From NCBI GenBank assembly GCA_002269645.1, contig NIVC01004127.1, positions 1 to 58,892 of the forward strand: a stretch of 58,892 nucleotides of DNA, read 5' to 3'. The DNA comes from Macrostomum lignano (Eukaryota). Position numbers and translations under genes: made by a program. Below the pieces are notes generated by a model, which saw only the letters and a list, made by a program, of their open reading frames with translations, was not told the origin of the DNA and searched no databases. This document shows positions 16,270 through 58,892 of this stretch, piece after piece (within the stretch, counting starts at the first letter, position 1; every line of letters begins with the position of its first letter).

Positions 16270-16535
16270 GGAGGTTCGCCTCTTTTTGACCCGAAAATCT
16301 GGCCCTCTCTGACCCAAAAAATCCAACCTCTCTGACCCCAAAGATCCGTCTCTCTCTGAACCTAAAGATCCACCCTCTCTGACCCCAAAGATCCAGACTC
16401 TCTGAACCCAAAGATCCGCCTCTGAACCTCAAGATCCACCCTCTCTGACCCCAAAGATCCACCCTCTCTGACCCCAAAGATCCACCCTCTCTGGCCACAA
16501 AAATCCACCCTTTCTGCAACCCCAAAGATCCGCCC
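16270..16535. repeat. About 23-bp minisatellite (CTCTCTGACCCCAAAGATCCACC)
   Basis: About 11 degenerate tandem copies are visible. Confidence 0.85.
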
Positions 16536-20090: not shown

Positions 20091-20312
20091 GGTTTGCTTT
20101 GAAAAGAAATTTCTTAATAAATTAATCTGAAAACGAAAATCTAACACCCTGTTATACTCGTAGACTCGAACAAAACCATTTTGGAGTGTTATTGGTTTTA
20201 GTCTATACGCAGGCACACACTCACACAGGAGTGTACAGCGGTCCTAACTTTATTTATCGTTAGGCATGTACACTTCACTGCGCCTTGGGCTCATGGATTA
20301 GCCACAAATTAA

Positions 20313-21043
20313 GGGGGCGCTTCATAAGACCTAAATTTCACAACGCCTAAAGCACATGACTTCACATCACCTAAATTTCATAACGCCTAAACTCGAAAGT
20401 GCAGCCTCCTTCACATCGCCTAAATTTCATAACGCCTAAAATTTCTGCACGCTCTTTCACATCGCCTAAATTTCATAACGCCTAAAACCGAAAATGCATC
20501 CTACTTCATATCGCCTAAATTTCATATCGCCTAAATTTCATATCGCCTAAACTTCATATCGCCTAAATTTCATATCGCCTAAACTTCATATCGCCTAAAT
20601 TTCACATCGCCTAAACTTCATATCGCCTAAATTTCACATCGCCTAAACTTCATATCGCCTAAATTTCATATCGCCTAAATTTCATATCGCCTAAATTTCA
20701 TATCGCCTAAATTTCATATCGCCTAAATTTCATATCGCCTAAATTTCATATCGCCTAAATTTCACATCGCCTAAACTTCATATCGCCTAAATTTCACAAC
20801 ACCTAAAACTGAATGTGAAGGAGAGAAGCAAAGATTTTAGGCGTTGTGAAATTTAGGCGATATGAAATTTAGGCGATGTGAAAGAGCGTGCAAATATTTT
20901 AGGCGTTGTGAAATTTAGGCGATGTGAAGGAGGCTGCACTTTTGATTTTAGGCGTTGTGAAATTTAGGCGATATGAAATTTAGGCGTTGTGAAGTGTGGT
21001 GGTTTTAGGCGTTGTGAAATTTAGGTCTTATGAAAGCGTCCCC
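20313..21043. mobile_element. Foldback/MITE-like element with long imperfect TIRs and an internal 16-bp tandem repeat
   Basis: The left end GGGGGCGCTTCATAAGACCTAAATTTCACAACGCCTAAA is the inverted repeat of the right end TTTAGGCGTTGTGAAATTTAGGTCTTATGAAAGCGTCCCC. Direct flanks AAATTAA at 20306-20312 and 21044-21050. The (TTCATATCGCCTAAAT)n unit is inverted in the right arm. Confidence 0.85.
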
Positions 21044-32714: not shown

Positions 32715-33640
32715 TGAGCGTCAGGTTGTGAGTCAGTGCTGACAGTAAAGTGTCAGATTTTGGGTCAGTGCTGGCAGTAAAGTGTCAGGTTGTGAGTCAG
32801 TGCTGACAGTAAAGTGTCAGATTGTGGGTCAGTGCTGACAGTAAAGTGTCAGATTGTGGGTCAGTGCTGACAGTAAAGTGTCAGGTTGTGGGTCAGTGCT
32901 GGCAGTAAAGTGTCAGGTTGTGAGTCAGTGCTGGCAGTAAAGTGTCAGGTTGTGAGTCAGTGCTGGCAGTAAAGTGTCAGGTTGTGAGTCAGTGCTGACA
33001 GTAAAGTGTCAGATTGTGGGTCAGTGCTGGCAGTAAAGTGTCAGGTTGTGAGTCTGTGCTGGCAGTAAAGTGTCAGGTTGTGGGTCAGTGCTGGCAGTAA
33101 AGTGTCAGATTGTGGGTCAGTGCTGGCAGTAAAGTGTCAGATTGTGGGTCAGTGCTGGCAGTAAAGTGTCAGATTGTGGGTCAGTGCTGACAGAAAAGTG
33201 TCAGATTGTGGGTCAGTGCTGGCAGTAAAGTGTCAGGTTGTGAGTCAGTGCTGGCAGTAAAGTGTCAGATTGTGGGTCAGTGCTGGCAGTAAAGTGTCAG
33301 ATTGTGGGTCAGTGCTGGCAGTAAAGGTGTCAGGTTGTGAGTCAGTGCTGGCAGTAAAGTGTCAGGTTGTGAGTCAGTGCTGGCAGTAAAGTGTCAGGTT
33401 GTGAGTCAGTGCTGGCAGTAAAGTGTCAGGTTGTGAGTCAGTGCTGGCAGTAAAGTGTCAGGTTGTGAGTCAGTGCTGGCAGTAAAGTGTCAGGTTGTGA
33501 GTCAGTGCTGACAGTAAAGTGTCAGGTTGTGAGTCAGTGCTGACAGTAAAGTGTCAGGTTGTGGGTCAGTGCTGGCAGAAAAGTGTCAAACTGAGTCAGT
33601 GCTGACATAAAAGTGTCAGGGTATGGGTCAGCGCTAACTG
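32715..33640. repeat. 32-bp minisatellite (GTCAGTGCTGGCAGTAAAGTGTCAGGTTGTGA)
   Basis: About 29 tandem copies immediately upstream of the consortin-like ATG. Confidence 0.95.
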
Positions 33641-42583: not shown

Positions 42584-43926
42584 TGAGGGTCATCCCAAAA
42601 GTTTCAGCAAACGCTTATTAATTTTCAACAAACGAGTGTCAGAACAATGAACATGTCAAAAACCTTCAAAATAACTTCGTTGACTTGAATTGTGCGCTCC
42701 CAGCGGCCAGGCAACTTTTAAACGCCATCAGCAGCGCCGGATTCGCACAGGTCTTTTGCAATGCGGCCGACCTCGCTGATCAGGTCATCCAGGCAATGGA
42801 AACAATGCCCTCAGAGCTGGTTCTTAAGCTTCGGAAAAAGGTCGAAATCGCAGGGACTGAGGTCTGGGGAGTAAGGAGGATGAGGCAGCACCTCCCACTG
42901 GTAGTCCCGCAGTAGGTCCTGCACAATGCGGGCTGTGTGCAAACTGGCATTGTTGTGCAGAAGAAGTGGACCAAGTTCCAGGGTTTGTGGCCGCTTTTTG
43001 CGCAAGGCAGGCCGAAGATGGTGAATAATGAAGCTCCAATAGTACTGTTGGTTGATGTTTTGGCCCTCAGGAACGCGGTGGATAAGAATAATGCCAAAGC
43101 TGTCGTAGCATGCGATGATCATCATCTTGTCGGCTCCCTTGGCGCGCCGCAGAACTGATGGTCTTGATGGCTAGGCAGAACCTTTCGACTGCCACTCGGA
43201 ATTCTGACTTTTGAGATTGGGCTCGTACGAACAGATCCAAGTCTCATCAAGCGTGACAATACGGTCTAGGAAAGCCAAACCCTCTCTCCTGAACCGATGC
43301 AGAAGCTGCTGAGCAGTTGTCACCTGGCGTGCCTTGTTGTCATCCGTGAGATGGTGCGGCACCCACCTGGCTGTGACCTTTTGCAGTCCAAGATCCTGGA
43401 TGAGGATCCGATGCACACTCGACGAGGGGATTCCGGACAGCTCAGCCATTTCTTCGCATATCCAACGGCGATTGATGTTCAGCAGCCCTTGGATCAACTC
43501 GATGTTCGACTCTGTGCGAGCTTCTTTTGGCCTTCCAGATCGTGGGTCATCCTCGACATCAGAGCGGCCATTCTTGAATCGACTGTACCAGTCGTACACG
43601 GCTCGCTGGCTCATCGCATTTGGCCCATGGGCCTGCAGCAACTGATGGTGAATTTGAGCTGCAGGGACACCACGAAGACATTCCATTTTAGTGTATGAGC
43701 GCTGCTCAAAGTTTGACGGAAATTCCATTTTATCATTGTCGGCCGATGTTTGATTTAGTATCTCACAAAATGTTCTTTATAAAACAGAATTTTGCAGCTA
43801 GAATGCTAAAAACTGACTCAGACACCCAAAATATGCTCATCTTTCGTGTGGTATAAGTGCTGTAGTCCTAAAAGTTGTCTATGGCACAAAATCATTCGAT
43901 TGCTGAAACTTTTGGGATGACCCTCG
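42584..43926 (-). mobile_element. Mariner transposon (irritans-like CGAGGG TIR), full length, inactivated
   Basis: 27-bp TIR (T/C)GAGGGTCATCCCAAAAGTTTCAGCAA with TA TSDs at 42582-42583 and 43927-43928. The transposase from 43728 has WVPHHL, DETW and YSPDLSPCDF motifs, in-frame stops at 43171-43173 and 42811-42813, and HDNA changed to HNNA. Confidence 0.95.
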
Positions 43927-43928
43927 TA

Positions 43929-44178: not shown

Positions 44179-45159
44179 TTTAACCATGCATCATTGTGTA
44201 ATATAAGAGAGAAAATAAATGAGAGTAAAAGAAGACTGCAAAAGGAGACTGCAAATTACATTTAAAAAAACCTGGCTCCCCAGTATACACAGCATTATAT
44301 TGCCCAGGACCTTTTTTATATATAATAATTTTCTCAAAAAAAGCAAAATTAGTTATTTATAGTTGCAGTTTTAAATTAGTTTTAGCTTTGATAAGATCAT
44401 AATTTTATTCCTTATCTAGGTTTTATATGACTGGTTTTAAATTCAAGCTTTATTTATAAATATTATGGGCTAGAATTATTATTTAATCTAATTTTTAGTA
44501 GGTTTCCATGCCTTGTTTAAAGTTAGGGTTGATAAAAGCAATCATTATAAAAATCCTTATATCCTGAAACCACCCATTGACCATGCCCTAATGGTTGGCT
44601 ATTGACCATTTGGTTGGGTTAAGTTTAGGTTGATGAAATCAATTCTTATGAAAAATCCCTCATCTCAAAACTATAGTTGTTGGCTTTAAGCTGAGTATTG
44701 GCTTTAAGTGTAACTAATTGCAGTTTGTAGTATGCAACTAAAACCCACTTATACAGATCTGGCTAAGAGTGACCTGTAACTCATTGGCAGGCTATTATTA
44801 CACAAAAGGGTAACTATTTTGTTGGACAAATATAACATGATTTTTATCTATTCTAGCTAATTATAGTTCATTAAAAGTACAAGAACCTTCTAAACGACCA
44901 AATGCTATCTGGTTAATTGTCTGTCATTTTTCTACTTTTTAGACAAATTTTCCAATGGATATTCCATCATCTCATTGCAGCTAACAATAGCCATTATGCT
45001 AAAGGCAGTCACATTTTTTTGTCAGACAATTACCCATCTAAATGCACCCAGTGCAACACCAGCTTGCTTAATTTCTATTGCTAAGCGATTGCTTAGCTAT
45101 CAATACAATAGTGGAGAAAAACAAAAGCACAGGCAAACCAGCATTAGTGACAATGCTGG

Positions 45160-47839
45160 AGCTAGAATAGTAGATTTTCGTAGCGATGTGCTGAGCAAAC
45201 CAACACCGGGTATGATGAAAGCAATGATTGAATCAGTTAGCTATGGAGACGATGTGTTTGGCGAGAATACCACTGTGATGGGTAAGTGTTTCTGGCATGT
45301 GTATTTATTAGTGCAAATCCTGTGCTTTTAAGCCACTTTTAGTTTTAGTGTCAGAAAAGACGTCATTTTAGTGTCAGAGATGCCCATTTTAGTGTCAGAG
45401 ATGCCACTTTTAGTGTCAGAGATGCCATTTTTAGTGTCAGAGATGTCACTTTTAGTGTCAGAGAAGAAGAAGACGCCACTTTTAATGTCAAAGATGCCAC
45501 TTTTAGTGTCAGAGACGCCAGTTTTAATGTTAGAGACCCTGATGTGTTCCTTATTACCAGTCCTCAACCGTAATCAAGGAACAATCACTTCTAGCTCAGT
45601 AGCTAGGCAACCCAGTATGTCAACAGAAGGTATTCAATTACCTTGAGTCCTTAACTGAGAGCTCTCGTCAATACTCCTTGTTCGTTGATCTCGCTATCAG
45701 TAGCGTCTGTCCTTCAGGAATTCCGGGCGCCGGTCAACAGTTGATCTGGTCCGCTCTTGCAGTTGTCTCCTTGACTTCTTGCCGGCCGGTAATCTGTAGT
45801 TCGGACCAATCGGAAGCCTACTCCTTCTAGTAGTGCCTCTATGCACTCTAGGTATGGCTCCGGAAACCACTGATAGTCCTCTAAGATCTATCAGGGGCAG
45901 TCCTTCTGGAGACTGCAACCAGTAGAGTCTAAACAGACTCAGGAGTCTCAACAGACTCACAATAAACTCAAGTCACTCTTGGACTTGAGCGAGACGTCTC
46001 TAACAACAACGGCGCAAATGAGTAAGGCTTACCGCAGGAACTCGACCACGTCTTCGAGTTGCTTCAGGAAGTCTGCTGCAGAGCTTCCTCTTCGGAGCTT
46101 TCTCTCTCGGAGATTCTTGGCTCCGGGTCCGTTCCGGACCACTTGTATTTATAGGCGTTCAGACCTCTCTCGAGGTCGTACATCACTGTCTTCGCAAATG
46201 TCAAAGGGTCACGATTCGGTGGCTGTCAAGCATGACAGGGTAGAAAGTTGCGCAACTAGTCTATTGTAAAAGCGCATGATTGGTTACCGTAGCTGGTAGA
46301 CTTTGATTGGTTCATCCGGGTGCAACCCGAGTGCAAACCAAATGATGACTTGAAGGTGGGGTTTGAATTGACAGTTGTTGGTCGCACGTGATTGGGTGAT
46401 TTCTAAAATTAGCATGCTCGAGGTCTCTCTCTTCCTATTGGTTAGTCCGAATATACTTATAGTTCAAAGCATACCTTATTCATGCTCTTCAATTTACTAC
46501 TAAATAAAATGTGTGAGTAGTACGTTAACACTTTTATGTCTTTTTTACGAAAGGTAGAACACTCTACAACCCCACTTTTAGTGCCAGAGACGCCACTTTT
46601 AGTGTCAGGGATGTCACTTTTAGTTCAGGGCCTCCACTGTTTTCGAAGCAACTTCAGCGCTTTTAGAAGATAAACTAATGTGCTTACATGTCTAATTTTA
46701 TTTCTAAAAAATGAACAGAACTGGAGTCGCGAGTCGCTAAAATGCTTGGCCAAGAAGCTGGACTATTTGTCACTAGCGGCACTATGGGCAACTTACTGCC
46801 CGTGATGTCGCACTGTAGGGAGCGAGGTTCAGAAGTTATCTTGGGCGATCTGTGTCATATTCATCTGTACGAACAGGTATTCTATTAACTATTTGAACTG
46901 ATTGAATAGCTGTATATAAAAATGTATTGATTTGATATTTTACTAGCCTGACAACAATCTTTGTCTTGCTCTAATCTCGAGTACTTTCCTCTTTGTCTAC
47001 TCTACTACTCTACTTCCATTGCTAAGGTCTTTGTTTTGCACTACTTTCGGTGCTAAGGTCTTTGTCTACTCCACTTCCATTGCTAAGTTCGTTATGTTGT
47101 ACTACTTCCAGTACTGAGGTCTTTGTCTACTTTACTTACATTGCTGTATTTTTCTTGCAGTACTTCCGGTGCTAAGGTCTTTGTTTTGCACTACTTTCGG
47201 TACTAAGGTCTTTGTTCACTCTACTTCCATTGGTGCCTATGTCTAGTATACTCCCGGGGCTAAGATCTTTGTGTTGCACTACTTTCAGTACTTGAAGTCT
47301 TAATCTTCCATTATTTAGGTCTTTGTTTTACTCTATTTTCGTTGCCAAAGTCTTTATTTTTGCCCTGCTTCCAGAATTGAGGCCCTTGTCTCGCTAACCT
47401 ACCTGTACTAAGGTCTTTGTCTCATTTGATTACCTGTATTAAAGTCTTGCATCGCTTAAGGACACTGCTTGAGGTCTTTGTCTCGAAACAATTTTGTCGT
47501 CTCCTCAGGTCTTTATAGAAGCTCAATGTTTTTATAACAAACAAATAAACATTTTCTCCATAGGGAAGTTTGGCCTCATTCGCCGGCGCGCACCACAGGG
47601 CGGTCAGCACCAATCCTGACGGCACCCTCTGCCTGGAGCAGTGCCGGCGCCTGATCCGCACCAATGCGGAGGACCCGCACTATCCAATCACCAGGGCGCT
47701 GTGCCTGGAGAACACGCACGGACTGGCCGGCGGCAAAGTGCTTCCCGTGGCTTACTTTGCCGAGGTGAGGGGATACGTATCGGTGTCTTTGTCTGTCTGT
47801 CTGTCTGTCTGTCTGTGTGTCTGTGTACTGTGGATCTTT

Positions 47840-47876
<37 letters not shown>

Positions 47877-47878
47877 TT

Positions 47879-47935
<57 letters not shown>

Positions 47936-50900
47936 GTGTCTGTCTGTGTGTGTATCTGTCTGTCTGTCTGTCTGTCTGTGTGTCTGTGTACTGTGTATCT
48001 TTGTGTCTGTCTGTGTGTGTGTGTCTTTCTGTCTGTCTGTGTGTCTGTCTGTCTGCCTGTCTTTCTGTTTGTCTGTCTCTGTTTGTCTGTCTCTGTTTGT
48101 CTGTCTCTGTCTGTCTGTCTGTCTGCCTGTCTTAGTGTCTGTCTGTCTGCCTGGCTGTCTGTCTGTCTGTCTGTCTTTCTGTAATTATCTCTCTGGGAGT
48201 CTGTCTGTAACAAAGTCTTAGTTTTCTGTCTTTCTGTAAGTTTTAGTCAATTTATCAATTTTATTGTCAATCCATACAAGACGAATACTGTACGCAGGCG
48301 AGCACTCATATACGCTCACACTGGGTGTACAGCGGTCCCACATTTGCATTTCAAATTGTCAGGCCTTGGTGGCTGGCCCTCATGGGTGTGAATGGCTGAA
48401 CAGCACATACAATAACAATTTTCGTGCACCACAAGCCCCAAATGATGTGGCCTCACACGGAGTGGAACCAGGGTAAGGGTCGTGGCGCGAGACGCGTTTA
48501 CCGCTAAACTGGCTCTTCCCTCCCCTAGCCAATGTTTGCCTGTCCGCCATCACTCCTATGCAATAAATTTCCCTATGCACTCCAACATTCGCAGGCCAGA
48601 GAGCTCTGCAACAGGTACGGCATGAAGCTGCACGTTGATGGAGCCAGACTGATCAATGCAGCCGTGGCTTTGGGTATCGACCCTATTGAGTATGGCAGAT
48701 ATGTCAGTTCAGTGACTATTTGCTTCTCAAAGGTGAGAATCTGAGGATCTAGTTCAGGGGTTGCAAGCTGTTTTCTTTTACCTCAAAGGCCAGATAAAGA
48801 ACCCAGCTCATAGCGTCGGGCTATGTAAGAGAGAATAGAGGATGAAAGAGGGGAGGAGAAGAGAGAGGGAAGAGAAGGGAAAAAGAGAGAAGATAGAAAA
48901 AGAGAGGAGAGAAGAGAGGAAAGAGGGGAGAGAAGAGAGGAGATAGAAGAGAGGAGAGAGAAGAGAGGAGAGAAGAGACAAAGAGGGAAGAGACGAGAAA
49001 GAAAAGAGGGGAGAGAGGAGAGGAGAGACAAAAGAGGGAAGAGAAGAGAGGAGAGGGGAGAGAAGAGAGGAGAGGAGAGAGAAAAAGAGGGAAGAGAAGA
49101 GAGGAGACGAGAGAGAATAAAGAGGGGAGAGAAGAGAGGAGAGGAGAGAGAGAGAAAAAGAGGGGAGAGAAGAGAGGAGAGGAGACAAAGAGGGAAGAGA
49201 AGAGACGAGACGAGAAAGAAAAGAGGGGCGAGAGGAGAGGAGAGACAAAAGAGAGAAGAGAAGAAAGGAGAGAGGAGAGAAGAGAGGAGAGAGGAGAGAA
49301 GAGAGGAGACGAGAGAGAAAAAAGATGAGAGAAGGGAGCTGAGAAGAGCCAAGCCTTGAGCGGGTCGGATTGCTATTGTGAAGTTTCAAAAGACCCAAGC
49401 GCCGAATAAAGAGGCTTCGCGGGTTTAAATTCGCCGCCCCCTGATCTCGTAGATGCAACTATGAATTCCTAGCAGTTTTTCTGCATGAATTCATTTCTCT
49501 GTTTTTTTCCAGGGTCTCGGCGCACCCGTCGGGTCCTGCATCGCATCGGATGCTGATACTATTAGTTAGTAAGTGCTGTCTATGTACTCTACGTGTACAC
49601 TGAATAACTCTCAGAATTGAAATTCCAAGCTGGCATTAGTCGGAAAAGTTCAAAATTGAATCCATCAAGGCTGAGTACGGAGTTGAAAATAACTTAGTAT
49701 TTTCTTGTTCTAAATTTTTGGCGCCTGTCAAAATAATTTCAGTTGCCGTCGAATTCGCAAAGCGCTCGGCGGCGCCGCCAGACAGCCTGGACTTTTGGCC
49801 GCTGCGGCCAGCTATTCGCTGGACGTAGCCAAGGACACCCTGTCAGCTGATCACGCCAATGCCCAGCTGATCTATTCAGGTTAGTTGGAAATTGTGCCAA
49901 TTTTTATTCACTTTTAGTTTAGTCAAAAAGAATTTTAAGGCAATTAAAAACGATAGTCATGTTGGTACAAAAGATGAGAGCCACATGATGCTACAATTTC
50001 TACAGATTTAAAAAATGCTACGAAGAGCTACAGAATTCCAAAAAGAGCTATTGGGTTCTACAAAGAGCTAGAGTGCTACAAAGAGCTACAAAATGTTACA
50101 AAGAGTTAAAGAGTGTTAGAAAGAGCTACAGTGTGCTACAAAGAGCTCAAGAGTGCTACAAAGAGCTACAGTGTGCTACAAAGAGCTACAGTGTGCTACA
50201 AAGAGCTACAGTGTGCTACAAAGAGCTACAGTGTGCTACAAAGAGCTACAGTGTGCTACAAAGAGCTACAGAGTGCAGAGTGCTACACAGAGCTACAGGG
50301 TGCCACACAGAGCTACAGAGTGCAAAGTGCTACACAGAGCTACAGGGTGCAGAGTGCTACACGGAGCTACAGAGTGCAGAGTGCTACACAGAACTACAGG
50401 GTGCAGAGTGCTACACGGAGCTACAGTGCAGAGTGCTACACGGAGCTACAGAGTGCAGAGTGCTACACGGAGCTACAGGGTGCTAAAAAGAGCTACAGAG
50501 TGATACAAAGAGCTACAGAGTGCTACAAAGATCCACAGGATACCACAAAGAAGTACAGAGTGCTACAAAGAGCTACAGAGTGCTGCAAAAAGCTACAGAA
50601 TGCTACAAAGAGCTACAGAAGGCTACACAGAGCTAAAGAATGCTACAAAGAGCTATAGAAGGCTACAAAGTGCTACAGAGTGACACAAAGAGCTATAGGA
50701 TGCTTCCAAACCTAGTTATATGTGTTATTGTGGTCAAAATACAATAAAGTTTTTCTCAATCTCATTCCGCACAGGTGTGTCGCAGGTCAACCTACCCGAC
50801 TGGCTGGTGTTTGAGAAGCCGCAGACCAATGTAATGCAAATTAAACTTACTAAGGATGCTCCAATAAGTATCGACCAACTGCAGACTATTATTGAAGAGG

Positions 50901-51594
50901 TAAGCCAGTCTTAAAAAGCTTTGATCTCTTAATCGGTAGACTGTTTAAACAGATATGTTTAATTATTAATTAGTTTCTTTTCAGTAGTCCTTGATGATCT
51001 CTAGTTTACTGTATAGGCATTATTGCACTGCAGTCTGGAGAGTAATTGGGTTGACCTTTTTTGTCTCCTCATAACCTACACACACGCCTGTTGTATGTCG
51101 AAATAGTTAACTCGTTTATTATATTATATTAGTTACTATCTTAATTAGTTTGTTTCAAAGATCGTTATGTTAATATTCTACCCCAAATCACTTTCTTAAT
51201 TCTAAAATTTACATATTCCAGGGCTTCTATATTGATGATAAGAATAATATATATACTCCTACGAGGGCTGCATGGGGCTTCATCATACACACGCTCACAC
51301 AGGGTTGTACAACGGCCTTTTTCCTAATCCCCATCAGACATGTACATCCGGGTGTGAATTCCACAAGCACGAAATCCAGCACCAACCACCAGCTCCGGAA
51401 CTAATAATTCACATCGAATCCTGTTTCATTTTCTCCAGCCAACCGACTCCTGCAAGATTCGTTTACGAGCTCCCGCCGTCTCTGAGACCATCATTAGATT
51501 GCTCACTCACAACGATCTGACCCGTCAGGACTGCCTGTTGGCCGTTGAGAAGCTGAAATACGCCTTGCAGAATGTTGTGGATCTTCAAAAATGA
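45160..51594 (+). CDS. tha1: Low-specificity L-threonine aldolase (PLP-dependent); exons ~45160-45281, 46719-46876, 47564-47764, 48595-48732, 49513-49568, 49743-49879, 50775-50899, 51439-51594; start codon not resolved
   Basis: [14 protein letters not shown]...[42 protein letters not shown]|GLGAPVGS (PLP lysine) and [12 protein letters not shown]. All GT-AG junctions are phase-compatible. Confidence 0.93.
45335..45540. repeat. 21-bp minisatellite (TTTTAGTGTCAGAGATGCCAC), resuming at about 46570-46625
   Basis: The tandem copies are interrupted by about 1 kb of unrelated sequence. Confidence 0.85.
47000..47430. repeat. Degenerate repeat of about 31 bp (CTACTTTCGGTGCTAAGGTCTTTGT...)
   Basis: Recurrent CTAAGGTCTTTGT cores in aldolase intron 2. 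Confidence 0.65.
47780..48200. repeat. (TGTC)n/(TG)n microsatellite in aldolase intron 3
   Basis: Direct reading. Confidence 0.95.
48290..48515 (-). mobile_element. Probable tRNA-derived SINE; its 3' part recurs at about 20205-20260 and 51290-51330
   Basis: Minus-strand head GAGCCAGTTTAGCGGTAAACGC...GGTTCCACTCC is A/B-box-like. The motif CTCACAC[A/T]GG..TGTACA[G/A]CGG is present at three places in the window. Confidence 0.5.
48755..49443 (+). mobile_element. Non-autonomous hAT-like element with an AG-only interior (same family as 28591)
   Basis: Ends CAGGGGTTGCAAG and TTCGCCGCCCCCTG. Flanks ATCTAGTT / ATCTCGTA form a degenerate 8-bp TSD. The 3' 90 bp aligns with 29105-29193. Confidence 0.8.
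50015..50700. repeat. About 20-bp minisatellite (GCTACAAAGAGCTACAGTGT) in aldolase intron 6
   Basis: Tandem copies with longer sub-variants. Confidence 0.9.
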
Positions 51595-52458
51595 ATCTGA
51601 CTGTCCATTATTAATTAAAGATTAATCTGCTACAAAGAGCTACAGAATTCTACAAAGTGTTACAGAGTTCTGTAAAGGGCTAAAGTGTTCTACAAAAAAA
51701 CTGCATGGTGCTAAAAACAGTTACAACCAGCTTTGTAGCTCTTTACATTGAAAAACATGCCTTGCAGAATATTGTTGAGATAATTTTTTAAAGATTTGAT
51801 TATTTTAATTAAAAAATAGTTAACTTTCTCTCATTAACACACATCCGGTGCTTTCATTTTTTGTGAATTTTTCAATAATATTTTACAGATATTCGTAAAT
51901 ATAGTTTATATGTACAACAACTAATTGATTGCTTAGGTGACTGTCACTGATTGCAATATTGAAATATTTTTTTCGAGGATTTTTTAGCGTAAAGTGCTAA
52001 GCCGTGCTTAATACCACGTTTTAGCATCTATAATGTTTTCATTATTTTTCAAAGATTACTATGCTGTGCAAATTGCTATATCTTATTGCGCCCCATTGTA
52101 TGCTTGAATTAATTGATAGAATTTTTCTAATTATATTTTCTGTTCAAAAAATACAATGAAAGAAATTTTATCTCGACGTATTGCTCTTTGTGTTTTTGAT
52201 AAATTTATTTAATTTTTATTATAGCAAACAAGGTCTACTCTTGTGGATGATAGAATTGCCTCAGCGCTAGCGCTGTATTTGCAATACATCTGTCATTATG
52301 ATAAATAGTTTAGATCATTATATCATATACCACCAGTTATATTAATATCATAGTCATAAATCTTACCAAACTACCGGTACAAAACTTTATGCTCTTCAAG
52401 CAAATTATCTGCAAATAATTAAAAATTGTTCTAAAAAATCGACTAGTAAACACCCGAG

Positions 52459-52528
52459 ATGTCTGCTTTAACTCCTCGAATGTCGGGAGCAATCGTCTGC
52501 CTCCTAGTGCTTATCGTCGGTGTACCAG
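52459..52528 (+). CDS. Constant first coding exon (signal peptide) of the MAM-like variable-exon gene
   Basis: ATG at 52459 reads MSALTPRMSGAIVCLLVLIVGVP, with a hydrophobic h-region and a canonical CAG|GTAAGT donor in phase 1. Confidence 0.8.
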
Positions 52529-52604
52529 GTAAGTGCAACGCTTTCGTTGCTTATTAAAATTACCCAATCAAAATATGAAAGACTTTAAATAAAGTATTCA
52601 ATAT

Positions 52605-52626
52605 TTGGCAAGGCTCGTTGCTCCAT
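52605..52626 (+). promoter_or_regulatory. Putative splicing docking site (TTGGCAAGGCTCGTTGCTCCAT)
   Basis: It is the reverse complement of a motif found upstream of all 12 downstream paralogous exons. The sequence match is seen directly; the function is inferred. Confidence 0.8.
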
Positions 52627-52954
52627 TCTCTATATAGTTGAAAAATTGGCTAATATGATAAAATAATTTTTTTCGAATGAGTTGCCTGAGTAGTTTAAAA
52701 ATATTGTCTTTAAATTTTTTTGAATGGGGCTAAGATGCGCATTTTTTCACGAATTTGTGATTCATTGTAACAAAACAAAATATGATAATTAATTATCTAA
52801 TTAATTTGCTTGAATTTATATTTAAAATCAGTAGCTTTAAGTTATTATAATGCGATTAGGAGTTAACGAGATTCTTTCATATCATACGCTCGTACATGAT
52901 CAATGTGTTTGCAAAAATTGTTGCTCTAGCGTGCATCGATTGCGCCTACTCTAG

Positions 52955-53339
52955 GGGTGCAAAATTCACTGGCTGTTTTTGACGATTCGGTGTCAGTTTC
53001 GTGCGACTTTGAACAGCAACATTCTGCTGCTAGTAGAAGTTCGTCAAAAACTGATTCTCAGTTCTGCAACTGGGTAGATTTAGCCTGGAAACCGGGCAGT
53101 GCTTGGCAGATTCGCTATCTGACAGAGTTCAACACTCAGGCTGTCTGTCTGCACGGCGGCTCAGCCAGACTGCAGAGTCCCTGGTGGATTGATTCTGCTA
53201 GTAGCAATTTCAGGCGTCAGAGTGCTCAGTGCTTGTCGTTTGCTTATCACGTAACTCCTAACAATCAATTAGGAGATTCATCGAAGTCTTCTATCGAAAC
53301 TGACTTACCTCAACTGGCTTTATTGAAGAATACTCACGG
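52955..53339 (+). CDS. Variable exon V1, N-terminal part of a MAM-like domain
   Basis: CTAG|GG acceptor. SCDFEQ...FCNWVD...WQIRY...ARLQSPW...QCLSFAYH...LALLKNTHG|GTAAGT. 385 nt (3n+1). Confidence 0.85.
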
Positions 53340-53653
53340 GTAAGTTTAGGTTTTTATTAACTCAAGGGAAAAACGTCTCTTGCCAACAGCACAAACTCGT
53401 GCATCTTTCTAACGATAGAAATCACTTAGTCAATTGACCTTTTTTCTCGGAAAGCATCCCTGACGACATGCATTGTTAAAACATAACATTACCACCTCTA
53501 ACAGGACTTGTGGCTTAGTTTTTTTAGTGATATCGCAATTAGTCCTTGTATAAGTTTATGGAGCAGCGAGTCTGCTCCGAGATTTCCTACATAAAGTCTA
53601 CTGCTTATAATTATTAATATGCTTTATGCAGTGTTGGAGGCAGTTGCAGTCAG

Positions 53654-54021
53654 TACTGGAGCTAGTGTAATGGAAGAAAGTCCCTATCAACGGATCGCTG
53701 GTCAAGCGACGGTTATAATCGGGAATTAGAATGGCGTCGATTTGCTATTCATAGCAGTCTGAACGCTGGTTCTCCTGCCTCGTCAGTTAACGTTAGAACC
53801 GGATCTGCAATTACGAATAGTTGGTGCACAGCTGGATTGATTCCTTCACCGTCGGTTGCTGTGTCTGGTCGGTTGTTAAGCGACTGGGTGCGCAGCGGCC
53901 GCGATAGCAGCAATGGACTCTGCTTGTCGTTTAGTTATCGTATCGACTATGGACCAGAACGACGGAAAAGCGATGTTGACGATACCGCCGCAGTGTTGGC
54001 TCTTCTAAGGCGATCGTCGGG
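53654..54021 (+). CDS. Variable exon V2 (5' boundary uncertain; in-frame TAG at 53663 suggests an indel or pseudo-exon)
   Basis: C...RWSSDGYNRELEWR...SGRLLSDWV...LCLSFSYRID...LALLRRSSG|GTTAGA. Confidence 0.6.
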
Positions 54022-54161
54022 GTTAGAAAAATGCTTTGATTTATGTTCTGTTTTTTGCATTTGCTTAGCAACGAGCCTTAGCTTAATTGATTGTGTTCGT
54101 ACTTAGCTTGGCTGGTAACTTGAGAAAATTATTTATAATTACCAACGCTTCGATTGCGCAG

Positions 54162-54525
54162 CGAGTTCACTTTCGTCGTCTGGTAGTGCTAACCGAATGG
54201 TTATTAAACAGCTCACCTGCAGTGGTAGCGGTTTCGGCAGTAGTTCTCAATCTTGTAATTGGTTCAACGATATCGGCTATAATACTGAGGCGCATTGGAA
54301 GTTGGCTAGCATTGCCGATTCGGATGGTAGCGCTGCCACCGCTGCCACTTATCGAACCAGTTATTGCGCAGTTGTCACTGGCGGTGCTACTAGCGCACAG
54401 CTTGTATCGGCTAGATTTGTTAGCCTATTCATTGCTAGCAGTTCGGTCAGCGAAGGCTGCATGCAGTTCTCTTACCAGCTAGTTGATCGGCAGAGTCAAT
54501 TGCAATTGTTGAAGCGCAATTCCGG
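54162..54525 (+). CDS. Variable exon V3, MAM-like N-terminal part
   Basis: GCAG|CG acceptor. KQLTC...CNWFNDIGYNTEAHWKLA...ARFVSLF...CMQFSY...LLKRNSG|GTATGA. 364 nt (3n+1). Confidence 0.85.
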
Positions 54526-54675
54526 GTATGAGAATTGAAAAACACTATTATAGCTATATAACTAGTCATTATTAATGTCCTGTTGCAACGAGCCTTGTAG
54601 AAAATTAGTCAGAATTGGGAGTTTAGCAGTTACACGATTTTACAGTGATTGATTGCTGCTTTCACTGTATTTCAG

Positions 54676-55018
54676 CCTTTGGTTTATCAAACAGCAGATT
54701 TAGTGGCTTTGACATTAAAGCTTTGCAATGTCAAAGCAATGGCGCTGATACATGTCTATGGAGCGATGACAATGGCTACAATACAAAAGCGCACTGGAAG
54801 CTGGCTGCTGTGCAGTCTTCGCCAGACTCTCCGTTACACCGATCAGCTTTCTGCATGGTTCCAATAAATCCTAGCGTCACGGCTGCGACCTCAATTTCGG
54901 CTAGATTTGTCAGCTTATTTCTCTCCGAACCGATTGAGTCCGCCTGCTTGCAGTTTGTGTATCAGTTGGTACCTGCAGCCTCAGCTCCATCGCTCCAGTT
55001 GCTTAAACGTCACTCTGG
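54676..55018 (+). CDS. Variable exon V4, MAM-like N-terminal part
   Basis: TCAG|CC acceptor. ALQC...CLWSDDNGYNTKAHWKLA...ARFVSLF...CLQFVY...LLKRHSG|GTAAAT. 343 nt (3n+1). Confidence 0.85.
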
Positions 55019-55135
55019 GTAAATTGCACAGGATTCCCCTTTAATTTTTTTTCGAATAGGATGGAGCAACGAAACCTTGATTGACCAAAACTCTGTTGAT
55101 AATTTAGTAAAATAATGGCTTGAAAAATAATCTAG

Positions 55136-55445
55136 TTACCGGTCTATCTGATGAAGCTGTAAAACAATTGCACTGCGATAGTGGATCCCGCTGCTATTGG
55201 CTAGATGACAGTTACAATACTGACGCCCACTGGCAGTTGGCTACTGTTACTGAGAGTTCTCGCTTTCAAACGCACTATTGCCTAATTAGAGATGTGTCGG
55301 CGCTTAAACGTGTAACTAAGGCTCGTTTTGTTAGCCGCTTTGTTACTGACAGCAAAGTGGGCTGTTTGCACTTTCGCTATCTGATCAGTCAGCAGGATGA
55401 TGAGTTAAGTGGTGCGGATCTGCACCTGCTTCGACGGAATCGAGG
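55136..55445 (+). CDS. Variable exon V5, MAM-like N-terminal part
   Basis: CTAG|TT acceptor. KQLHC...CYWLDDSYNTDAHWQLA...ARFVSRF...CLHFRY...LLRRNRG|GTATGG. 310 nt (3n+1). Confidence 0.85.
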
Positions 55446-55614
55446 GTATGGCGCTGGTTTCTTTTGTACTCTTAGTTATGATGCTGCATGATTACTTACT
55501 GTTATTTTAAACTTGTTCAAACAAACACGAGCAACGAGCCTTGACTAGCTTGCAGTTTCTTTATAAACTGATAATTATATAGTCCAGGTTATACATTAGA
55601 TGGCTCTCTTGCAG

Positions 55615-55900
55615 CAACTAAAATAGATCTGCAGTGCACAGCTCGAGGTCACTGTGCCTGGCTCAACGACGTTTTCAATCGTCTGCACTGGACCTTGGCA
55701 GACGTTGGTGCAGTTGCTGGTGGTAACACTGGCCTGTGTCTTGTACCTCAGTCGGTGTCGTCATCTTCTGTTGGTAGCGATGCAGGCGGTCAATTTGTCA
55801 GTCCGACGGTATTTTCTAAAGTTAGCGGTCAGATGTGTCTTCAGTTTGTCTACTGGACTGCTGGTCGAGCTAAATTGAATCTATTAAAGCGCAGTTTAGG
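55615..55900 (+). CDS. Variable exon V6, MAM-like N-terminal part (alternative same-phase acceptors give starts at 55588 or 55600)
   Basis: DLQC...CAWLNDVFNRLHWTLA...GQFVSPTV...MCLQFVYW...LLKRSLG|GTATGA. 286 nt (3n+1). Confidence 0.8.
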
Positions 55901-56042
55901 GTATGATTTATCATTTTAGCGATGCTTGAACCGTCAAGATATATTTAGTTAATTTGATTTGATGCAACGAGCCTTGTCTAAAGTTTCTGTTTATAATAGA
56001 TCTTTAACGACTACATTGACTCTTTCGGAAAATCAATTTTAG

Positions 56043-56397
56043 CCGGTACATTAGCTGCAGTGTCAGTACCCGAGTTAACGTGCATAAGTACGTCAGCTAG
56101 CCCTTGCACTTGGCGCGACGATCAAGATAATATTGACGCTCATTGGCGCGCCTCCTTGTATCCGTCGGCTGCATTTCAGTCACCGCGATGTCTAGTGCCG
56201 GAGCCAAGCGTTTTGTCGGGTTCTAGCTACTCTAGCTCACGACCCTTAACCGTAGCTCGGTTTGTTAGCCAATGGCTTACTGGCAGACGTGGTGATATGT
56301 GTCTTCAGTTTGCCTATCGAATTGATCAACCGATGGCTACTCGTAAAGAGACAACTGTTGCTGGTGCTGGATTAAGCTTGCTGAAACGGAGCAGAGG
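56043..56397 (+). CDS. Variable exon V7, MAM-like N-terminal part
   Basis: TTAG|CC acceptor. PELTC...CTWRDDQDNIDAHW...ARFVSQW...MCLQFAY...LLKRSRG|GTATGA. 355 nt (3n+1). Confidence 0.85.
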
Positions 56398-56555
56398 GTA
56401 TGAGTTGGCTATAAAAATAATGCAAAAAACGTGAAATAACTGGAGTAACGAGCTTTTGTCATAAAATTTCAGTTAGTGTCCTTGGAATTTTGGCTTAAAT
56501 ATTGTAAGAGATGCATGTCTAATTATTTAACTGCTAGACTGTTTTTCCACCTCAG

Positions 56556-56874
56556 CGACGCTTGAACAGTTGTCCTGCCACGCTGGCGGTCACTGCAGTT
56601 GGCGTGATGATTTCGACAATAAAGGCGCCCACTGGGTGTCCGCCCTGGATGCTGCAAGCGACGCGTCCTCGTTAGGCAGCGGCAGATCGCACCTGTGCTT
56701 GGTTCAGAGCGGACCTCAGCCGCACAGTTTAGTGACTGGTCGCTTTGAGAGTCACTGGATTGCTGCCACTAAATCTGATAATGAGCAGCAGTTGTCGCCA
56801 TCTGTTTGCCTCACGTTCAGCTACTTGACGGCGCCGCGGGAGGTGTCGCTGAGTTTGCTCAAGCGAAACTGGGG
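56556..56874 (+). CDS. Variable exon V8, MAM-like N-terminal part
   Basis: TCAG|CG acceptor. EQLSC...CSWRDDFDNKGAHW...GRFESHW...VCLTFSY...LLKRNWG|GTAAAA. 319 nt (3n+1). Confidence 0.85.
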
Positions 56875-56987
56875 GTAAAAGAAATTGAGTTTAAATTTTG
56901 TTTACTTTGTGAGCAATGAGCTTTGCCATTAGTTATTGCTTGTATTTTAAAATTGTTTTTGTGACGCTTGCCTGAACATGAATTCAG

Positions 56988-57345
56988 CTTCTAAAATGGC
57001 TGACGAACGTCTTGCTTGTTCTTCGAGCACTTCGGCAATCTGTGCTTGGCGAAACGATCTTGACAACAAAGACGGCGCTTGGAAAATGACGCTGGAGCCG
57101 CCTGGCTTTAGCCGCGCAGCACTCTCGTCTTACTGTTTGGTTCCTATCAGGCGTCCAATGTCATCTGGCAGGAGTTCTGTCAGTCTAGTTGCTGAATTTC
57201 ATAGCGCTTGGGTGTCTGGAGGGACGACAGGATCAGACCCTAGTGCTGGTCAATTGTGTCTTCAGTTTGCATTTAGAGTGAAGGATTCGTTCCATTCTTC
57301 TAGTGCCAGCGCGGCAAAACTGGTTCTGCTAAAACGCGTCTCTGG
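56988..57345 (+). CDS. Variable exon V9, MAM-like N-terminal part
   Basis: TCAG|CT acceptor. ERLAC...CAWRNDLDNKDGAW...AEFHSAW...LCLQFAF...LLKRVSG|GTAGGA. 358 nt (3n+1). Confidence 0.85.
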
Positions 57346-57471
57346 GTAGGAGTTTTTGCATCATGTTTATTCCCGCTTCTTTAGGCGAGCCTTGCCAAGT
57401 TTATTGAATTTGATAGCACACCTGTGGTAGCTGAAATTGTAACCGTTTTTTATGTCTTTTTTTCAAATAAG

Positions 57472-57814
57472 TTACCCACTGCGTTTCGGTTGACTGCTCC
57501 TCAAAATTGCCAAATGTTTGCACATGGAGCGACGGTCAATTCAATCGAGCTGCCAACTGGAAGGTCGCAATTGACTCCAATAGTCGCTGTGCTTCCTATT
57601 GCCTCGTTCCAAATAAGATTAGGTCTCAAGCGATGACGTCATCACGTAGCTCTTCGGCACAGGCTTACACTGGAAGCTTTCTTAGTGGCTGGATTGTCGC
57701 TGAAGAGTCAAGACAGAATCCAATGTGTCTGCAATTCAATTACAAGTTTGTTCTAGCAGAGCCAGTAATATCCAAGCCTGGATTGCAACTGGCTTTGTTA
57801 AAGCGTACATTTGG
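57472..57814 (+). CDS. Variable exon V10, MAM-like N-terminal part
   Basis: TAAG|TT acceptor. SVDCSSKLPNVCTWSDGQFNRAANWK...GSFLSGW...MCLQFNYKF...LLKRTFG|GTATGT. 343 nt (3n+1). Confidence 0.82.
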
Positions 57815-57936
57815 GTATGTTTTTGGATTAAATTGGAGCAACGAGTCTTATTAATCAATTTTTAGCTTGATAAAAAATGCATCAAGTTTAATTAGTATAT
57901 GTAAAGCATCTAGAACTCGTAAATGCCCTCTTATAG

Positions 57937-58255
57937 CCGTCTCAATTGATTGCTCATCGACCTCGCCTACTTTTTGCACTTGGAGCGATTCACCTTTTAA
58001 TCGGGCAGCCAATTGGAAGGCCGCAATCGATCCCAGCGTTCGTAGCGGTGGTAGAAGCGCGTCCTATTGCTTGATTCCAAATAGACCAGTAGCTACAGAA
58101 GACACTACTCACAGCGGTAGCTTTCTTAGTAATTGGATAACCAAAACGAAAGAATCCGGTTCGCCAGAGCAGCAGATGTGTGTTCAGTTTGCGTACAAGT
58201 TTATTGGTTCGCCAATGACTAGAATGCATCTGGCTCTGTTAAAGCGTTCATATGG
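57937..58255 (+). CDS. Variable exon V11, MAM-like N-terminal part
   Basis: ATAG|CC acceptor. SIDCSSTSPTFCTWSDSPFNRAANWK...GSFLSNW...MCVQFAYKF...LLKRSYG|GTAAGG. 319 nt (3n+1). Confidence 0.85.
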
Positions 58256-58385
58256 GTAAGGTCTAAAACCTGTCAGGTAAAAGTGAGCTTTTTACAGTAG
58301 AGTTTCTTTGAGCAACGAGTCCTTGTGTATGCTGCTTTTTCATTTTTGCTATAGGTACGTTTGTACTTGTTTTATTGCGTTATAG

Positions 58386-58715
58386 TGACATGTCTTGCCT
58401 CTTCGATTAATTGCTCGTCCAATTCGCCTATGCTCTGCTCGTGGAGCGATTATCCATTCAATCGAGCCGCTAATTGGAAGGCAACAATCGATTCTAATAG
58501 TCGTTCGTCCTCTTATTGTTTAATTCCTAATGCGGCTTTGGTGATGCCTATTAATGCAGCGTCTGAACAAGGATTTGCGGCCAGCTTTATTAGCGGTTGG
58601 ATCGCTGGAAAAAACCAACGCTCGATGTGCTTGCAGTTTGCGTATAAATTTTAGTGTCATCTCAATTGCCTGAACGTAGGCAGTCTTCTCTGGCATTATT
58701 GAAACGTTCATTTGG
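58386..58715 (+). CDS. Variable exon V12, MAM-like N-terminal part (one T missing in the run at about 58649-58652)
   Basis: ATAG|TG acceptor. SINCSSNSPMLCSWSDYPFNRAANWK...MCLQFAYKF, then a frame shift to ...LALLKRSFG|GTATGC. Adding one T gives 331 nt (3n+1). Confidence 0.78.
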
Positions 58716-58892
58716 GTATGCTTTTATTTCAACTGATGCGATAAAAAAATGAGTACAAAAAGGTTCTGCTGCCCCCATAGATTAAAAAATTTCGTCAGGA
58801 GCGATGCATTGAAAAGCCTTAAAATGCGTCGTATGTTTGGTCATGAAGCTTTACTCCGGGCCTCTGTGAGACTGTATATTCGGTGCAACAAA

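What the first reader, a model, noticed from the sequence alone, without database searches (positions are those of the whole stretch)
52955..58715. Each variable exon encodes only the N-terminal part of a MAM-like fold, like Dscam half-Ig exons
Each exon follows C-x-(F)...C-x-W...W...C...ARF/L-x-S...C-L-x-F-x-Y...L-x-LLKR-x-x-G. That matches the MAM consensus (CDFE..C.W...W...ARL.SP...CL.F.Y...L.V) only up to about two-thirds of the domain. The C-terminal strands (W..G...W......F.I.F...DI.IDD) are missing from every exon. Inference: a shared downstream exon completes the beta-sandwich, giving a variable-face plus constant-face domain. Loops between conserved Cys/Trp anchors are Ser-rich and vary in length, like a diversified binding surface for self-recognition, immunity, adhesion or reproduction.
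Basis: partly seen in the sequence, partly recalled or inferred. Interest (0 to 1): 0.72.

Follow-up and report, generated by a model that had tools for sequence, protein, structure and literature searches.

The report
Flatworm MAM receptor with alternative-exon arrays
The window holds the start of a Macrostomum lignano (flatworm) cell-surface receptor gene whose single MAM domain is assembled by splicing from one of 14 alternative exons, one of about 18 further alternative exons and a constant exon, which points to a Dscam-like diversity system built on a different protein fold and found across flatworms.

Summary
Window 52955-58715 holds 12 tandem exon-like units on the + strand. All carry the C..CxW..W..C..ARF.S..CLxFxY..LxLLKRxxG pattern and a GG|GTAWG donor. 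They follow one signal-peptide exon (52459-52528). Each unit matches only positions 1 to about 93 of the 158-position Pfam MAM profile.

The same locus in GenBank (M. lignano, identical in the gene part except for three one-base indels) shows the rest of the gene: two more units (14 in all), then a second array of about 18 alternative exons for the middle strands. A constant 29-residue exon supplies the last strands, followed by a transmembrane segment and tail.

An AlphaFold model of A+B+constant is MAM-like, and both exon junctions lie inside predicted beta-strands. All these exons are 3n+1 bases long, so the frame survives only with one exon (strictly 1 modulo 3) from each array.

Each array has one upstream docking site complementary to a selector before nearly every variant, as in Dscam exon 6. 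Trematodes and cestodes have the same gene. Annotated Schistosoma mattheei isoforms combine the two cassettes independently. Six full-text searches of the held library found no paper describing this. Function is unknown; a recognition or adhesion receptor is inferred.

The parts
52459..52528 (+). Exon 1: start codon and signal peptide MSALTPRMSGAIVCLLVLIVGVP, plus 1 base (phase 1 out). Donor CCAG|GTAAGT.
   Evidence: Read directly. Identical to the N-terminus of GenBank model P0022.
52607..52626 (+). Docking site of array A (TGGCAAGGCTCGTTGCTCCA), 79 nt downstream of the exon 1 donor.
   Evidence: An unbiased scan of intron 1 gives a single peak at 52601-52630: median duplex energy to the 11 V introns is -30.7 kcal/mol against -10.0 for other positions. 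The antisense control gives -12 to -18.
52955..53339 (+). V1 exon (385 nt = 3n+1). It has a long Ser-rich insert between Cys1 and Cys2.
   Evidence: Acceptor and donor are those used by GenBank model P0022. Pfam MAM positions 1-84.
53558..53577 (+). Selector before V2.
   Evidence: Duplex with the docking site -32.8 kcal/mol, z -6.6 against shuffles. Register.
53632..54021 (+). V2 exon. Divergent: no first Cys pair, donor GTTAGA. Frameshifted here by a one-base deletion near 53679; it is 391 nt and intact in L001.
   Evidence: The acceptor is the one used in model P0001.
54063..54082 (+). Selector before V3.
   Evidence: -27.0 kcal/mol, z -4.2. Exact 12-mer GCAACGAGCCTT.
54162..54525 (+). V3 exon (364 nt). 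Acceptor predicted.
   Evidence: Pfam MAM 24.1 bits, profile 4-93.
54580..54599 (+). Selector before V4.
   Evidence: -28.4 kcal/mol, z -5.3. Exact 12-mer.
54676..55018 (+). V4 exon (343 nt). Acceptor predicted.
   Evidence: Pfam MAM 22.1 bits, profile 6-92.
55061..55080 (+). Selector before V5.
   Evidence: -32.2 kcal/mol, z -6.9.
55157..55445 (+). V5 exon (289 nt). Acceptor predicted; 55136 is an alternative.
   Evidence: Pfam MAM 24.0 bits, profile 5-86.
55526..55545 (+). Selector before V6.
   Evidence: -32.3 kcal/mol, z -7.6. Exact 12-mer.
55615..55900 (+). V6 exon (286 nt). Acceptor predicted.
55959..55978 (+). Selector before V7.
   Evidence: -30.5 kcal/mol, z -6.2. Exact 12-mer.
56043..56397 (+). 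V7 exon (355 nt). Acceptor predicted; 56055 is an alternative.
   Evidence: Pfam MAM 18.7 bits, profile 8-84.
56440..56459 (+). Selector before V8.
   Evidence: -31.3 kcal/mol, z -6.4. Its C>T changes keep G-U pairs.
56556..56874 (+). V8 exon (319 nt). Acceptor predicted.
56908..56927 (+). Selector before V9.
   Evidence: -34.2 kcal/mol, z -7.6.
56988..57345 (+). V9 exon (358 nt). Acceptor predicted.
57377..57396 (+). Selector before V10. It pairs with the 5' half of the docking site.
   Evidence: -33.6 kcal/mol, z -6.3. Register.
57472..57814 (+). V10 exon (343 nt). Acceptor predicted.
57833..57852 (+). Selector before V11.
   Evidence: -29.4 kcal/mol, z -5.4.
57937..58255 (+). V11 exon (319 nt). 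Acceptor predicted.
   Evidence: Pfam MAM profile 7-95.
58307..58326 (+). Selector before V12.
   Evidence: -27.5 kcal/mol, z -4.6.
58386..58715 (+). V12 exon. Frameshifted here by a one-base deletion at about 58649; it is 331 nt and intact in L001.

Best explanation
The region is the 5' part of one Macrostomum lignano gene (GenBank BOX15_Mlig029915g2) for a single-pass membrane protein with one extracellular MAM domain. The domain is assembled by splicing from three pieces.

- Array A: 14 alternative exons, 12 of them in this window, about 95-130 residues each. They supply the first strands, Pfam MAM positions 1 to about 95.
- Array B: about 18 alternative exons outside the window, about 50-60 residues each (SC..C.N..LW.S..W..V.L..DFK). 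They supply the middle strands.
- A constant exon (LIFEGTIPANNPNARICVDNITAYHRPC) supplies the last strands. A transmembrane helix and cytoplasmic tail follow.

Shown:
- The exon arrays, their splice sites and phases.
- The MAM-like fold of A+B+constant, with both junctions inside predicted strands.
- The same two-array layout in Schistosoma japonicum.
- Annotated S. mattheei isoforms that share the signal peptide and constant part but combine A and B cassettes independently.

Inferred mechanism: splicing is mutually exclusive. The frame enforces it. Exon 1 ends in phase 1, and every A and B exon is 3n+1 bases, so only one exon (or 4, 7...) from each array keeps the frame. The choice is made by competing RNA pairings of the Dscam exon-6 type. 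One docking site lies just downstream of the preceding constant or last exon (window 52607-52626 for array A; L001 17703-17740 for array B). It can pair with only one selector at a time. Selectors lie typically about 40-100 nt upstream of a variant's acceptor.

This would give up to about 14 x 16-18, roughly 220-250 ectodomains, differing mainly in loop sequence and length.

Inferred function: a diversified cell-surface recognition or adhesion receptor. This rests on the known homophilic role of MAM domains in RPTP mu/kappa.
For: - Units, motif, splice sites and phases.
- Per-exon Pfam coverage of the N-terminal ~60% only.
- B+constant matches Pfam MAM 107-158 at 27.3 bits. S. mansoni P0102 matches the full profile 1-158 at 44.6 bits.
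- Gene identity and near-identical GenBank locus L001.
- Array B and the constant exon.
- PDB profile hits to the neuropilin-1 MAM (5l73, E 3.7e-7) and to meprin alpha, in two stretches that correspond to A and to B-end plus constant.
- AlphaFold model: pLDDT 76.3, pTM 0.73. Junctions 129|130 and 182|183 lie inside strands E120-133 and E181-188.
- Foldseek top hits are MAM domains of meprin beta, LAST-MAM, neuropilin-1, meprin alpha, PTPRK and RPTP mu.
- Docking and selector, array A: 11 of 11 introns, z -4.2 to -7.6; 160 Watson-Crick, 19 G-U, 41 mismatches in the 20-nt core; unique peak, strand-specific.
- Docking and selector, array B: (16 of 18 introns, z -3.5 to -7.0).
- Orthologues in trematodes, cestodes and a monogenean.
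- Independent cassette combination in annotated S. mattheei isoforms (P0132/P0137 and P0136/P0140 share A and differ in B; P0102/P0130 share B and differ in A).
- S. japonicum locus with at least 14 A-type then at least 20 B-type exons.
- Conserved strands against variable loops (top-residue frequency 0.57 vs 0.24, p about 6e-13).
Against: - No RNA data for M. lignano were available. The only clean GenBank model uses V1 and the third B exon, so use of the other exons in this species is inferred.
- I could not check how far the S. mattheei isoforms rest on transcript evidence.
- All per-exon Pfam scores are below the gathering cut-off.
- Model TM-scores to solved MAM domains are moderate (0.48-0.58). 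Eph ligand-binding domains and CBMs also match, as expected for jelly rolls.
- V2, and several B units (the first, 20199, 21993, 25021), are aberrant and may be unused.
- No selector was clear before B1, B18 or V13 within the window.
- A docking site could not be shown convincingly in S. japonicum.
- The pairing energies come from duplexfold on short pieces, not from a fold of the whole pre-mRNA.
- Function is entirely inferred.
Confidence: 0.8

Rival explanations
1. Only V1 is a real exon. The other units are decaying duplicated pseudo-exons that are never spliced in.
For: The only clean GenBank model (P0022) uses V1. V2 is aberrant, and V2 and V12 are frameshifted in this window.
Against: All 14 units are open in L001 and keep the Cys/Trp anchors, phase-compatible acceptors and GT donors despite 18-54% identity. 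Selectors are conserved in otherwise unalignable introns. Orthologous arrays exist in Schistosoma, with annotated isoforms that use at least 7 different A cassettes. The window frameshifts are one-base deletions absent from the other assembly.
Confidence: 0.05
2. All units are constitutive exons of a long protein with many tandem MAM-like repeats. Several database gene models read it this way (P0001, P0003, P0006, P0007 and others).
For: Many predicted flatworm proteins concatenate 2-6 units.
Against: Each unit lacks the C-terminal 40% of the fold. Unit length is 3n+1, so consecutive inclusion shifts the frame. The concatenated models need internal, non-homologous acceptors, as P0001 does when it enters V3 and V11 midway. 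S. mattheei isoforms carry exactly one A and one B.
Confidence: 0.03
3. The variants are chosen by alternative promoters, as alternative first exons, like clustered protocadherins or chelicerate sDscam. They are not chosen by mutually exclusive splicing.
For: Arrays of variable 5' cassettes before constant exons are the layout of those systems.
Against: The units have no start codon followed by a signal peptide. They have AG acceptors in the phase left by the single upstream signal-peptide exon. S. mattheei isoforms with different A cassettes share the same signal peptide. Array B is internal in any case.
Confidence: 0.04
4. Mutually exclusive splicing is real, but the conserved intronic motif is a protein-binding splicing element or a relic of the tandem duplication, not a partner in an RNA duplex.
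For: The selectors share a consensus (TGGAGCAACGAGCCTTG) that could be a protein site. Tandem duplication copies intron sequence along with the exon.
Against: The motif's reverse complement occurs once, in intron 1, outside the duplicated units. Selectors match different overlapping parts of it (V10 the 5' half, V5/V8/V11 the 3' half). Many substitutions are C>T or A>G and keep G-U pairs on the sense strand. An unrelated docking/selector pair has the same layout in array B.
Confidence: 0.1

Closest known systems
Arthropod Dscam1 exon 4 and exon 6 clusters (mutually exclusive exons encoding the N-terminal halves of Ig2 and Ig3)
   Same: A tandem array of homologous exons, each encoding only part of an extracellular beta-sandwich domain, with the rest supplied by other exons. 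There are several clusters in one gene that combine independently. The product is a single-pass receptor.
   Different: The fold is MAM, not immunoglobulin, and there is no sequence relation. Here both variable clusters feed the same single domain, whereas in Dscam1 each cluster serves a different Ig domain. The numbers are smaller (about 14 x 18). The taxon is Platyhelminthes, not Arthropoda.
Dscam1 exon 6 docking-site/selector competing RNA structures (Graveley 2005; Jin laboratory papers such as PMC3535345 and PMC8791459)
   Same: There is one docking site in the intron after the upstream constant exon. One selector lies upstream of each variant, complementary to overlapping parts of the docking site.
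   Different: The sequences are unrelated. The layout is found here in both clusters of the gene. No experimental test exists. Repressor and activator proteins (hrp36, the locus control region) are unknown here.
MAM domains of RPTP mu/kappa, meprins and neuropilin-1 (Pfam PF00629)
   Same: Profile match and predicted fold. The domain is extracellular and membrane-distal, and conserved cysteines are present.
   Different: The similarity is very remote (12-16% identity in structural alignments). There are long Ser-rich loop insertions and eight cysteines in the ectodomain. The domain stands alone on a transmembrane stalk with no Ig, FN3, protease or CUB partners. No known MAM domain is assembled from alternative exons.
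Clustered protocadherins / chelicerate sDscam
   Same: A tandem array of variable ectodomain cassettes joined to constant exons, which generates cell-surface diversity.
   Different: Those systems use alternative promoters and whole-domain first exons. Here the exons are internal, behind one shared signal-peptide exon.

Membership tests
MAM domain (Pfam PF00629) | Match to the family profile above the curated cut-off (26.4 bits) over the whole domain. | tested here: met
   Single V exons score 11.8-24.1 bits and cover profile positions 1 to about 93 only, below the cut-off. P0022 as a whole scores 32.3 bits, B+constant scores 27.3 bits over 107-158, and orthologue P0102 scores 44.6 bits over 1-158. 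The criterion is met for the assembled domain, not for an exon alone.
MAM domain (Pfam PF00629) | A jelly-roll beta-sandwich of about 160-170 residues similar to solved MAM domains. | tested here: met
   AlphaFold model pLDDT 76.3, pTM 0.73. The ten best Foldseek PDB hits are all MAM-containing chains: meprin beta 4gwm (E 1.7e-8), LAST-MAM 8a28, neuropilin-1 5l73 (TMt 0.58) and meprin alpha. PTPRK 8a1f and RPTP mu 2c9a also appear lower in the list. TM-scores are only moderate.
MAM domain (Pfam PF00629) | Conserved cysteines forming intradomain disulfides. | tested here: inconclusive
   Cysteines are conserved at fixed positions: four in A, two in B and two in the constant exon.
Mutually exclusive exon cluster with competing RNA structures (Dscam1 exon 6 type) | A tandem array of homologous exons with the same splice phases, between constant exons. 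| tested here: met
   12 units in the window and 14 in L001. All are phase 1 in and phase 2 out, length 3n+1. Array B has the same property.
Mutually exclusive exon cluster with competing RNA structures (Dscam1 exon 6 type) | Exactly one variant per mature mRNA. | not testable with these tools
   There are no M. lignano transcript data. Indirect support comes from frame logic and from annotated S. mattheei isoforms with one A and one B each.
Mutually exclusive exon cluster with competing RNA structures (Dscam1 exon 6 type) | A single docking site complementary to a selector next to each variant. | tested here: met
   Array A: 11 of 11 introns, -27 to -34 kcal/mol, z -4.2 to -7.6, a unique peak, sense strand only. 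Array B: 16 of 18 introns. This is in silico only.
Dscam family (immunoglobulin superfamily) | Ig and FN3 domain architecture; sequence homology to Dscam. | tested here: not met
   The only domain found is MAM. No Ig or FN3 hit appeared in Pfam or PDB searches. It works like Dscam1 but is not a member of the family.

The most novel reading that the evidence does not exclude
Flatworms have their own Dscam1/protocadherin-like isoform code, invented independently. A single MAM-domain receptor has its binding surface composed combinatorially from two alternatively spliced segments of one domain. Choice is stochastic, through two docking/selector RNA switches, and the isoforms give isoform-specific (homophilic or self/non-self) recognition in neurons or other cells. 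The system would have been conserved from Macrostomum to schistosomes and tapeworms.
Probability: 0.25. Interest if true: 0.9.

Novelty: new variant of a known kind. Interest (0 to 1): 0.78.

Why it matters
Large mutually exclusive exon arrays that diversify a surface receptor are known chiefly from arthropod Dscam1. Vertebrates and chelicerates reach similar diversity by alternative promoters.

A comparable system in Platyhelminthes would be an independent origin of receptor hyper-diversity. It is built on a MAM domain, has two variable segments inside one domain, and appears to use the same RNA docking/selector logic.

It would also extend competing-RNA-structure control of big exon clusters outside arthropods.

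Finally, it would give a tractable free-living model (M. lignano) for a gene that is also present in schistosomes and tapeworms. In those parasites current annotations often break it into several genes or fuse its alternative exons.

Tried and rejected
- The word-indexed protein search with the exon profile found nothing. The exhaustive search was needed.
- The first AlphaFold run, on full-length P0022 with an untrimmed alignment, gave an unusable model (pLDDT 54.5).
- Exact look-ups of S. mattheei isoforms P0140 and P0138 found no locus.
- A shared selector motif in S. japonicum array A introns was not found. The best array B docking candidate there is G-rich and only about 4 sd from background, so it is inconclusive.
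- I did not compute dN/dS on loops. Paralogous exons are 18-54% identical, so synonymous sites would be saturated, and the two assemblies are identical in the exons. A strand-versus-loop conservation test was used instead.
- Six literature searches and two paper look-ups found no description of this gene. The library lacks most subscription journals, so prior description cannot be excluded.

Full report
**What is in the window**

The last 6.4 kb of the window (+ strand) holds a short first exon at 52459-52528. It encodes MSALTPRMSGAIVCLLVLIVGVP, a signal peptide, with donor CCAG|GTAAGT and phase 1 out.

Twelve tandem units follow between 52955 and 58715. Each unit is an open frame of about 95-130 codons. 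Each ends ...L-x-LLKR-x-x-G with the Gly codon split GG|GTA(A/T/G); V2 has GTTAGA. Each has an AG acceptor in the phase left by exon 1, a few codons before the first conserved Cys. All unit lengths are therefore 3n+1.

The units share only 18-54% identity and are 11-22% serine.

The other 52 kb of the window are minisatellite-rich. They also hold a threonine-aldolase-like gene at 44996-51579.

**Check of the MAM claim**

Pfam MAM (PF00629) is the best or only family matched by 7 of 10 units tested. Scores are 11.8-24.1 bits against a cut-off of 26.4. Every match covers profile positions 1-8 to 84-95 of 158, and none reaches the C-terminal third.

A profile of the units searched against 1.84 billion representative proteins found 116 hits. 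They fall into two classes:
- Multi-MAM proteins that match only the part up to position about 91.
- Flatworm proteins that match through the LLKR..G end.

**Identity of the gene and the rest of it**

One hit, P0022, is GenBank BOX15_Mlig029915g2 of Macrostomum lignano. It reads signal peptide + V1 + SCSQLK...DNWELWTS...GGNWFTQAVTIEPDTDFK + LIFEGTIPANNPNARICVDNITAYHRPC + transmembrane helix + tail.

Its locus, L001, matches window 48810-58892 at 98.9% identity. Within the gene part it is identical except for three one-base deletions in the window. Two of these cause the frameshifts seen in V2 and V12.

L001 continues past the end of the window and shows:
- Two further A-type exons, 14 in all.
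- A second array of about 18 B-type exons of 50-60 codons, all ending DFK|GT. Most begin AG|N-SC, with phase 2 in, phase 0 out and length 3n+1.
- One constant exon for the last ~29 residues of the domain.
- The transmembrane and tail exon.

B+constant matches Pfam MAM positions 107-158 at 27.3 bits. The Schistosoma mansoni orthologue P0102 matches the whole profile 1-158 at 44.6 bits. The approximate division of the profile is therefore A about 1-95, B about 96-129 and constant about 130-158.

**Fold**

A family profile hits the solved MAM domains of neuropilin-1 (5l73, E 3.7e-7) and meprin alpha. The match comes in two stretches that correspond to the A exon and to the end of B plus the constant exon.

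An AlphaFold model of P0022 residues 24-242 has pLDDT 76.3 and pTM 0.73, with 13 strands. The A|B junction (129|130) lies inside strand 120-133. The B|constant junction (182|183) lies inside strand 181-188.

The ten best Foldseek PDB hits are all MAM-containing chains: meprin beta, LAST-MAM, neuropilin-1 and meprin alpha. PTPRK and RPTP mu follow at ranks 16 and 27.

An A exon is therefore not a domain by itself. Its half-domain nature is confirmed, but the completing part is a second variable cassette plus a short constant piece, not one shared exon.

Columns in predicted strands are almost never gapped and are conserved (occupancy 0.99, top-residue frequency 0.57). The other columns are variable in both sequence and length (0.63 and 0.24; p about 6e-13). 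Inter-anchor lengths range, for example, over 5-20 and 6-28 residues.

**How the choice is probably made**

The frame logic is direct. Exon 1 leaves 1 base, each A exon adds 3n+1, B exons expect 2 bases and add 3n+1, and the constant exon starts in phase 0. Only 1 (modulo 3) exon from each array keeps the frame.

In addition, intron 1 holds a unique site at 52607-52626, TGGCAAGGCTCGTTGCTCCA. Its reverse complement recurs, in variants, once in every intron before V2-V12, usually 58-93 nt upstream of the acceptor.
- Duplex energies are -27 to -34 kcal/mol, against -14 to -18 for dinucleotide shuffles (z -4.2 to -7.6).
- A blind scan of intron 1 gives this site as the only peak (median -30.7 against -10.0).
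- The antisense strands of the introns do not pair.
- Selectors cover different overlapping parts of the docking site, and many substitutions keep G-U pairs.

Array B has its own, unrelated docking site (L001 17703-17740, in the intron after V14). Selectors are present in 16 of 18 introns.

This is the architecture described for Dscam1 exon 6. It is inferred here from sequence only.

**Relatives**

The gene is present in:
- Trematodes: Schistosoma, Paragonimus, Opisthorchis, Dicrocoelium, Calicophoron, Heterobilharzia.
- Cestodes: Spirometra, Dibothriocephalus, Hymenolepis, Taenia, Echinococcus, Mesocestoides, Schistocephalus.
- A monogenean: Protopolystoma.

Many database models fuse several alternative exons.

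The constant exon is almost invariant. KLILEGTIPAGYPDARICVDNITSYTEPC is identical from schistosomes to Spirometra.

Annotated S. mattheei isoforms share the signal peptide and everything from the constant exon onward, but carry different A and B cassettes in independent combinations.

The S. japonicum locus holds at least 14 A-type exons and then at least 20 B-type exons in the same order. It is currently split into three gene models.

**What is not known**

- No transcript data for M. lignano were available.
- The function is untested.
- Docking sites in parasites were not established.
- Whether variation lies on one face of the sandwich could not be examined.
- Six full-text searches found no paper describing the gene. 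The library is incomplete, so prior description cannot be excluded.

**Verdict**

The feature is best described as a flatworm MAM-domain receptor gene with two mutually exclusive exon arrays and Dscam-exon-6-like RNA switches. It is a new variant of a known kind and of high interest.

Noticed in passing
L001 18052-25153 (same gene, beyond the window end): A second array of about 18 alternative exons encodes the middle of the MAM domain. Several are aberrant and may be pseudo-exons: the first unit, 20199-20361 (no SC start), 21993 (truncated) and 25021-25153.
   Followed up: yes
L001 17703-17740 and the introns of array B: Array B has its own docking site (TAAAAATTTGGCAGCGGGGAAGACTTCAAGGTACCTTG) in the intron after V14. 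Complementary selectors (...CCTTGAAGTCTTCCC..GCTGCCAAAG) lie before 16 of 18 B exons.
   Followed up: yes
window 53679, 58649, 58882: The window has one-base deletions relative to GenBank NIVC01000034.1. Two of them frameshift V2 and V12. They look like assembly indel errors rather than biology.
   Followed up: partly
window 44996-51579 (+): A threonine-aldolase-like gene (Pfam Beta_elim_lyase) with 8 or more exons ends about 880 bp upstream of the MAM gene's first exon. One database model (P0001) wrongly fuses it to the signal peptide plus V2 and parts of V3 and V11.
   Followed up: partly
window 8140-13791, 17459-18900, 24271-25282, 32720-33635, 36324-37501 and others: The first 52 kb carry unusually many long minisatellites, for example a 21-bp unit repeated 271 times with strong GC skew. 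The window also has insertions relative to L001 at about 42585-43927 and 45539-46569.
   Followed up: no
L002 (S. japonicum SKCS01000025.1) 1-66482: The orthologous locus is annotated as three separate genes. At least 14 A-type exons (3262-16948) and at least 20 B-type exons (20139-60336) lie in one orientation. The gene is about ten times longer than in Macrostomum.
   Followed up: partly
P0022 residues 212-422 (outside the window): The M. lignano cytoplasmic tail is Pro/Ala-rich and contains a PPPRY (PPxY-like) motif. The schistosome tail is unrelated in sequence but nearly identical between S. mansoni and S. mattheei.
   Followed up: no
window 58716-58892: The intron after V12 has only a weak, split match to the docking site (-21.9 kcal/mol, z -1.7), unlike the other eleven introns. 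The window ends before V13.
   Followed up: no
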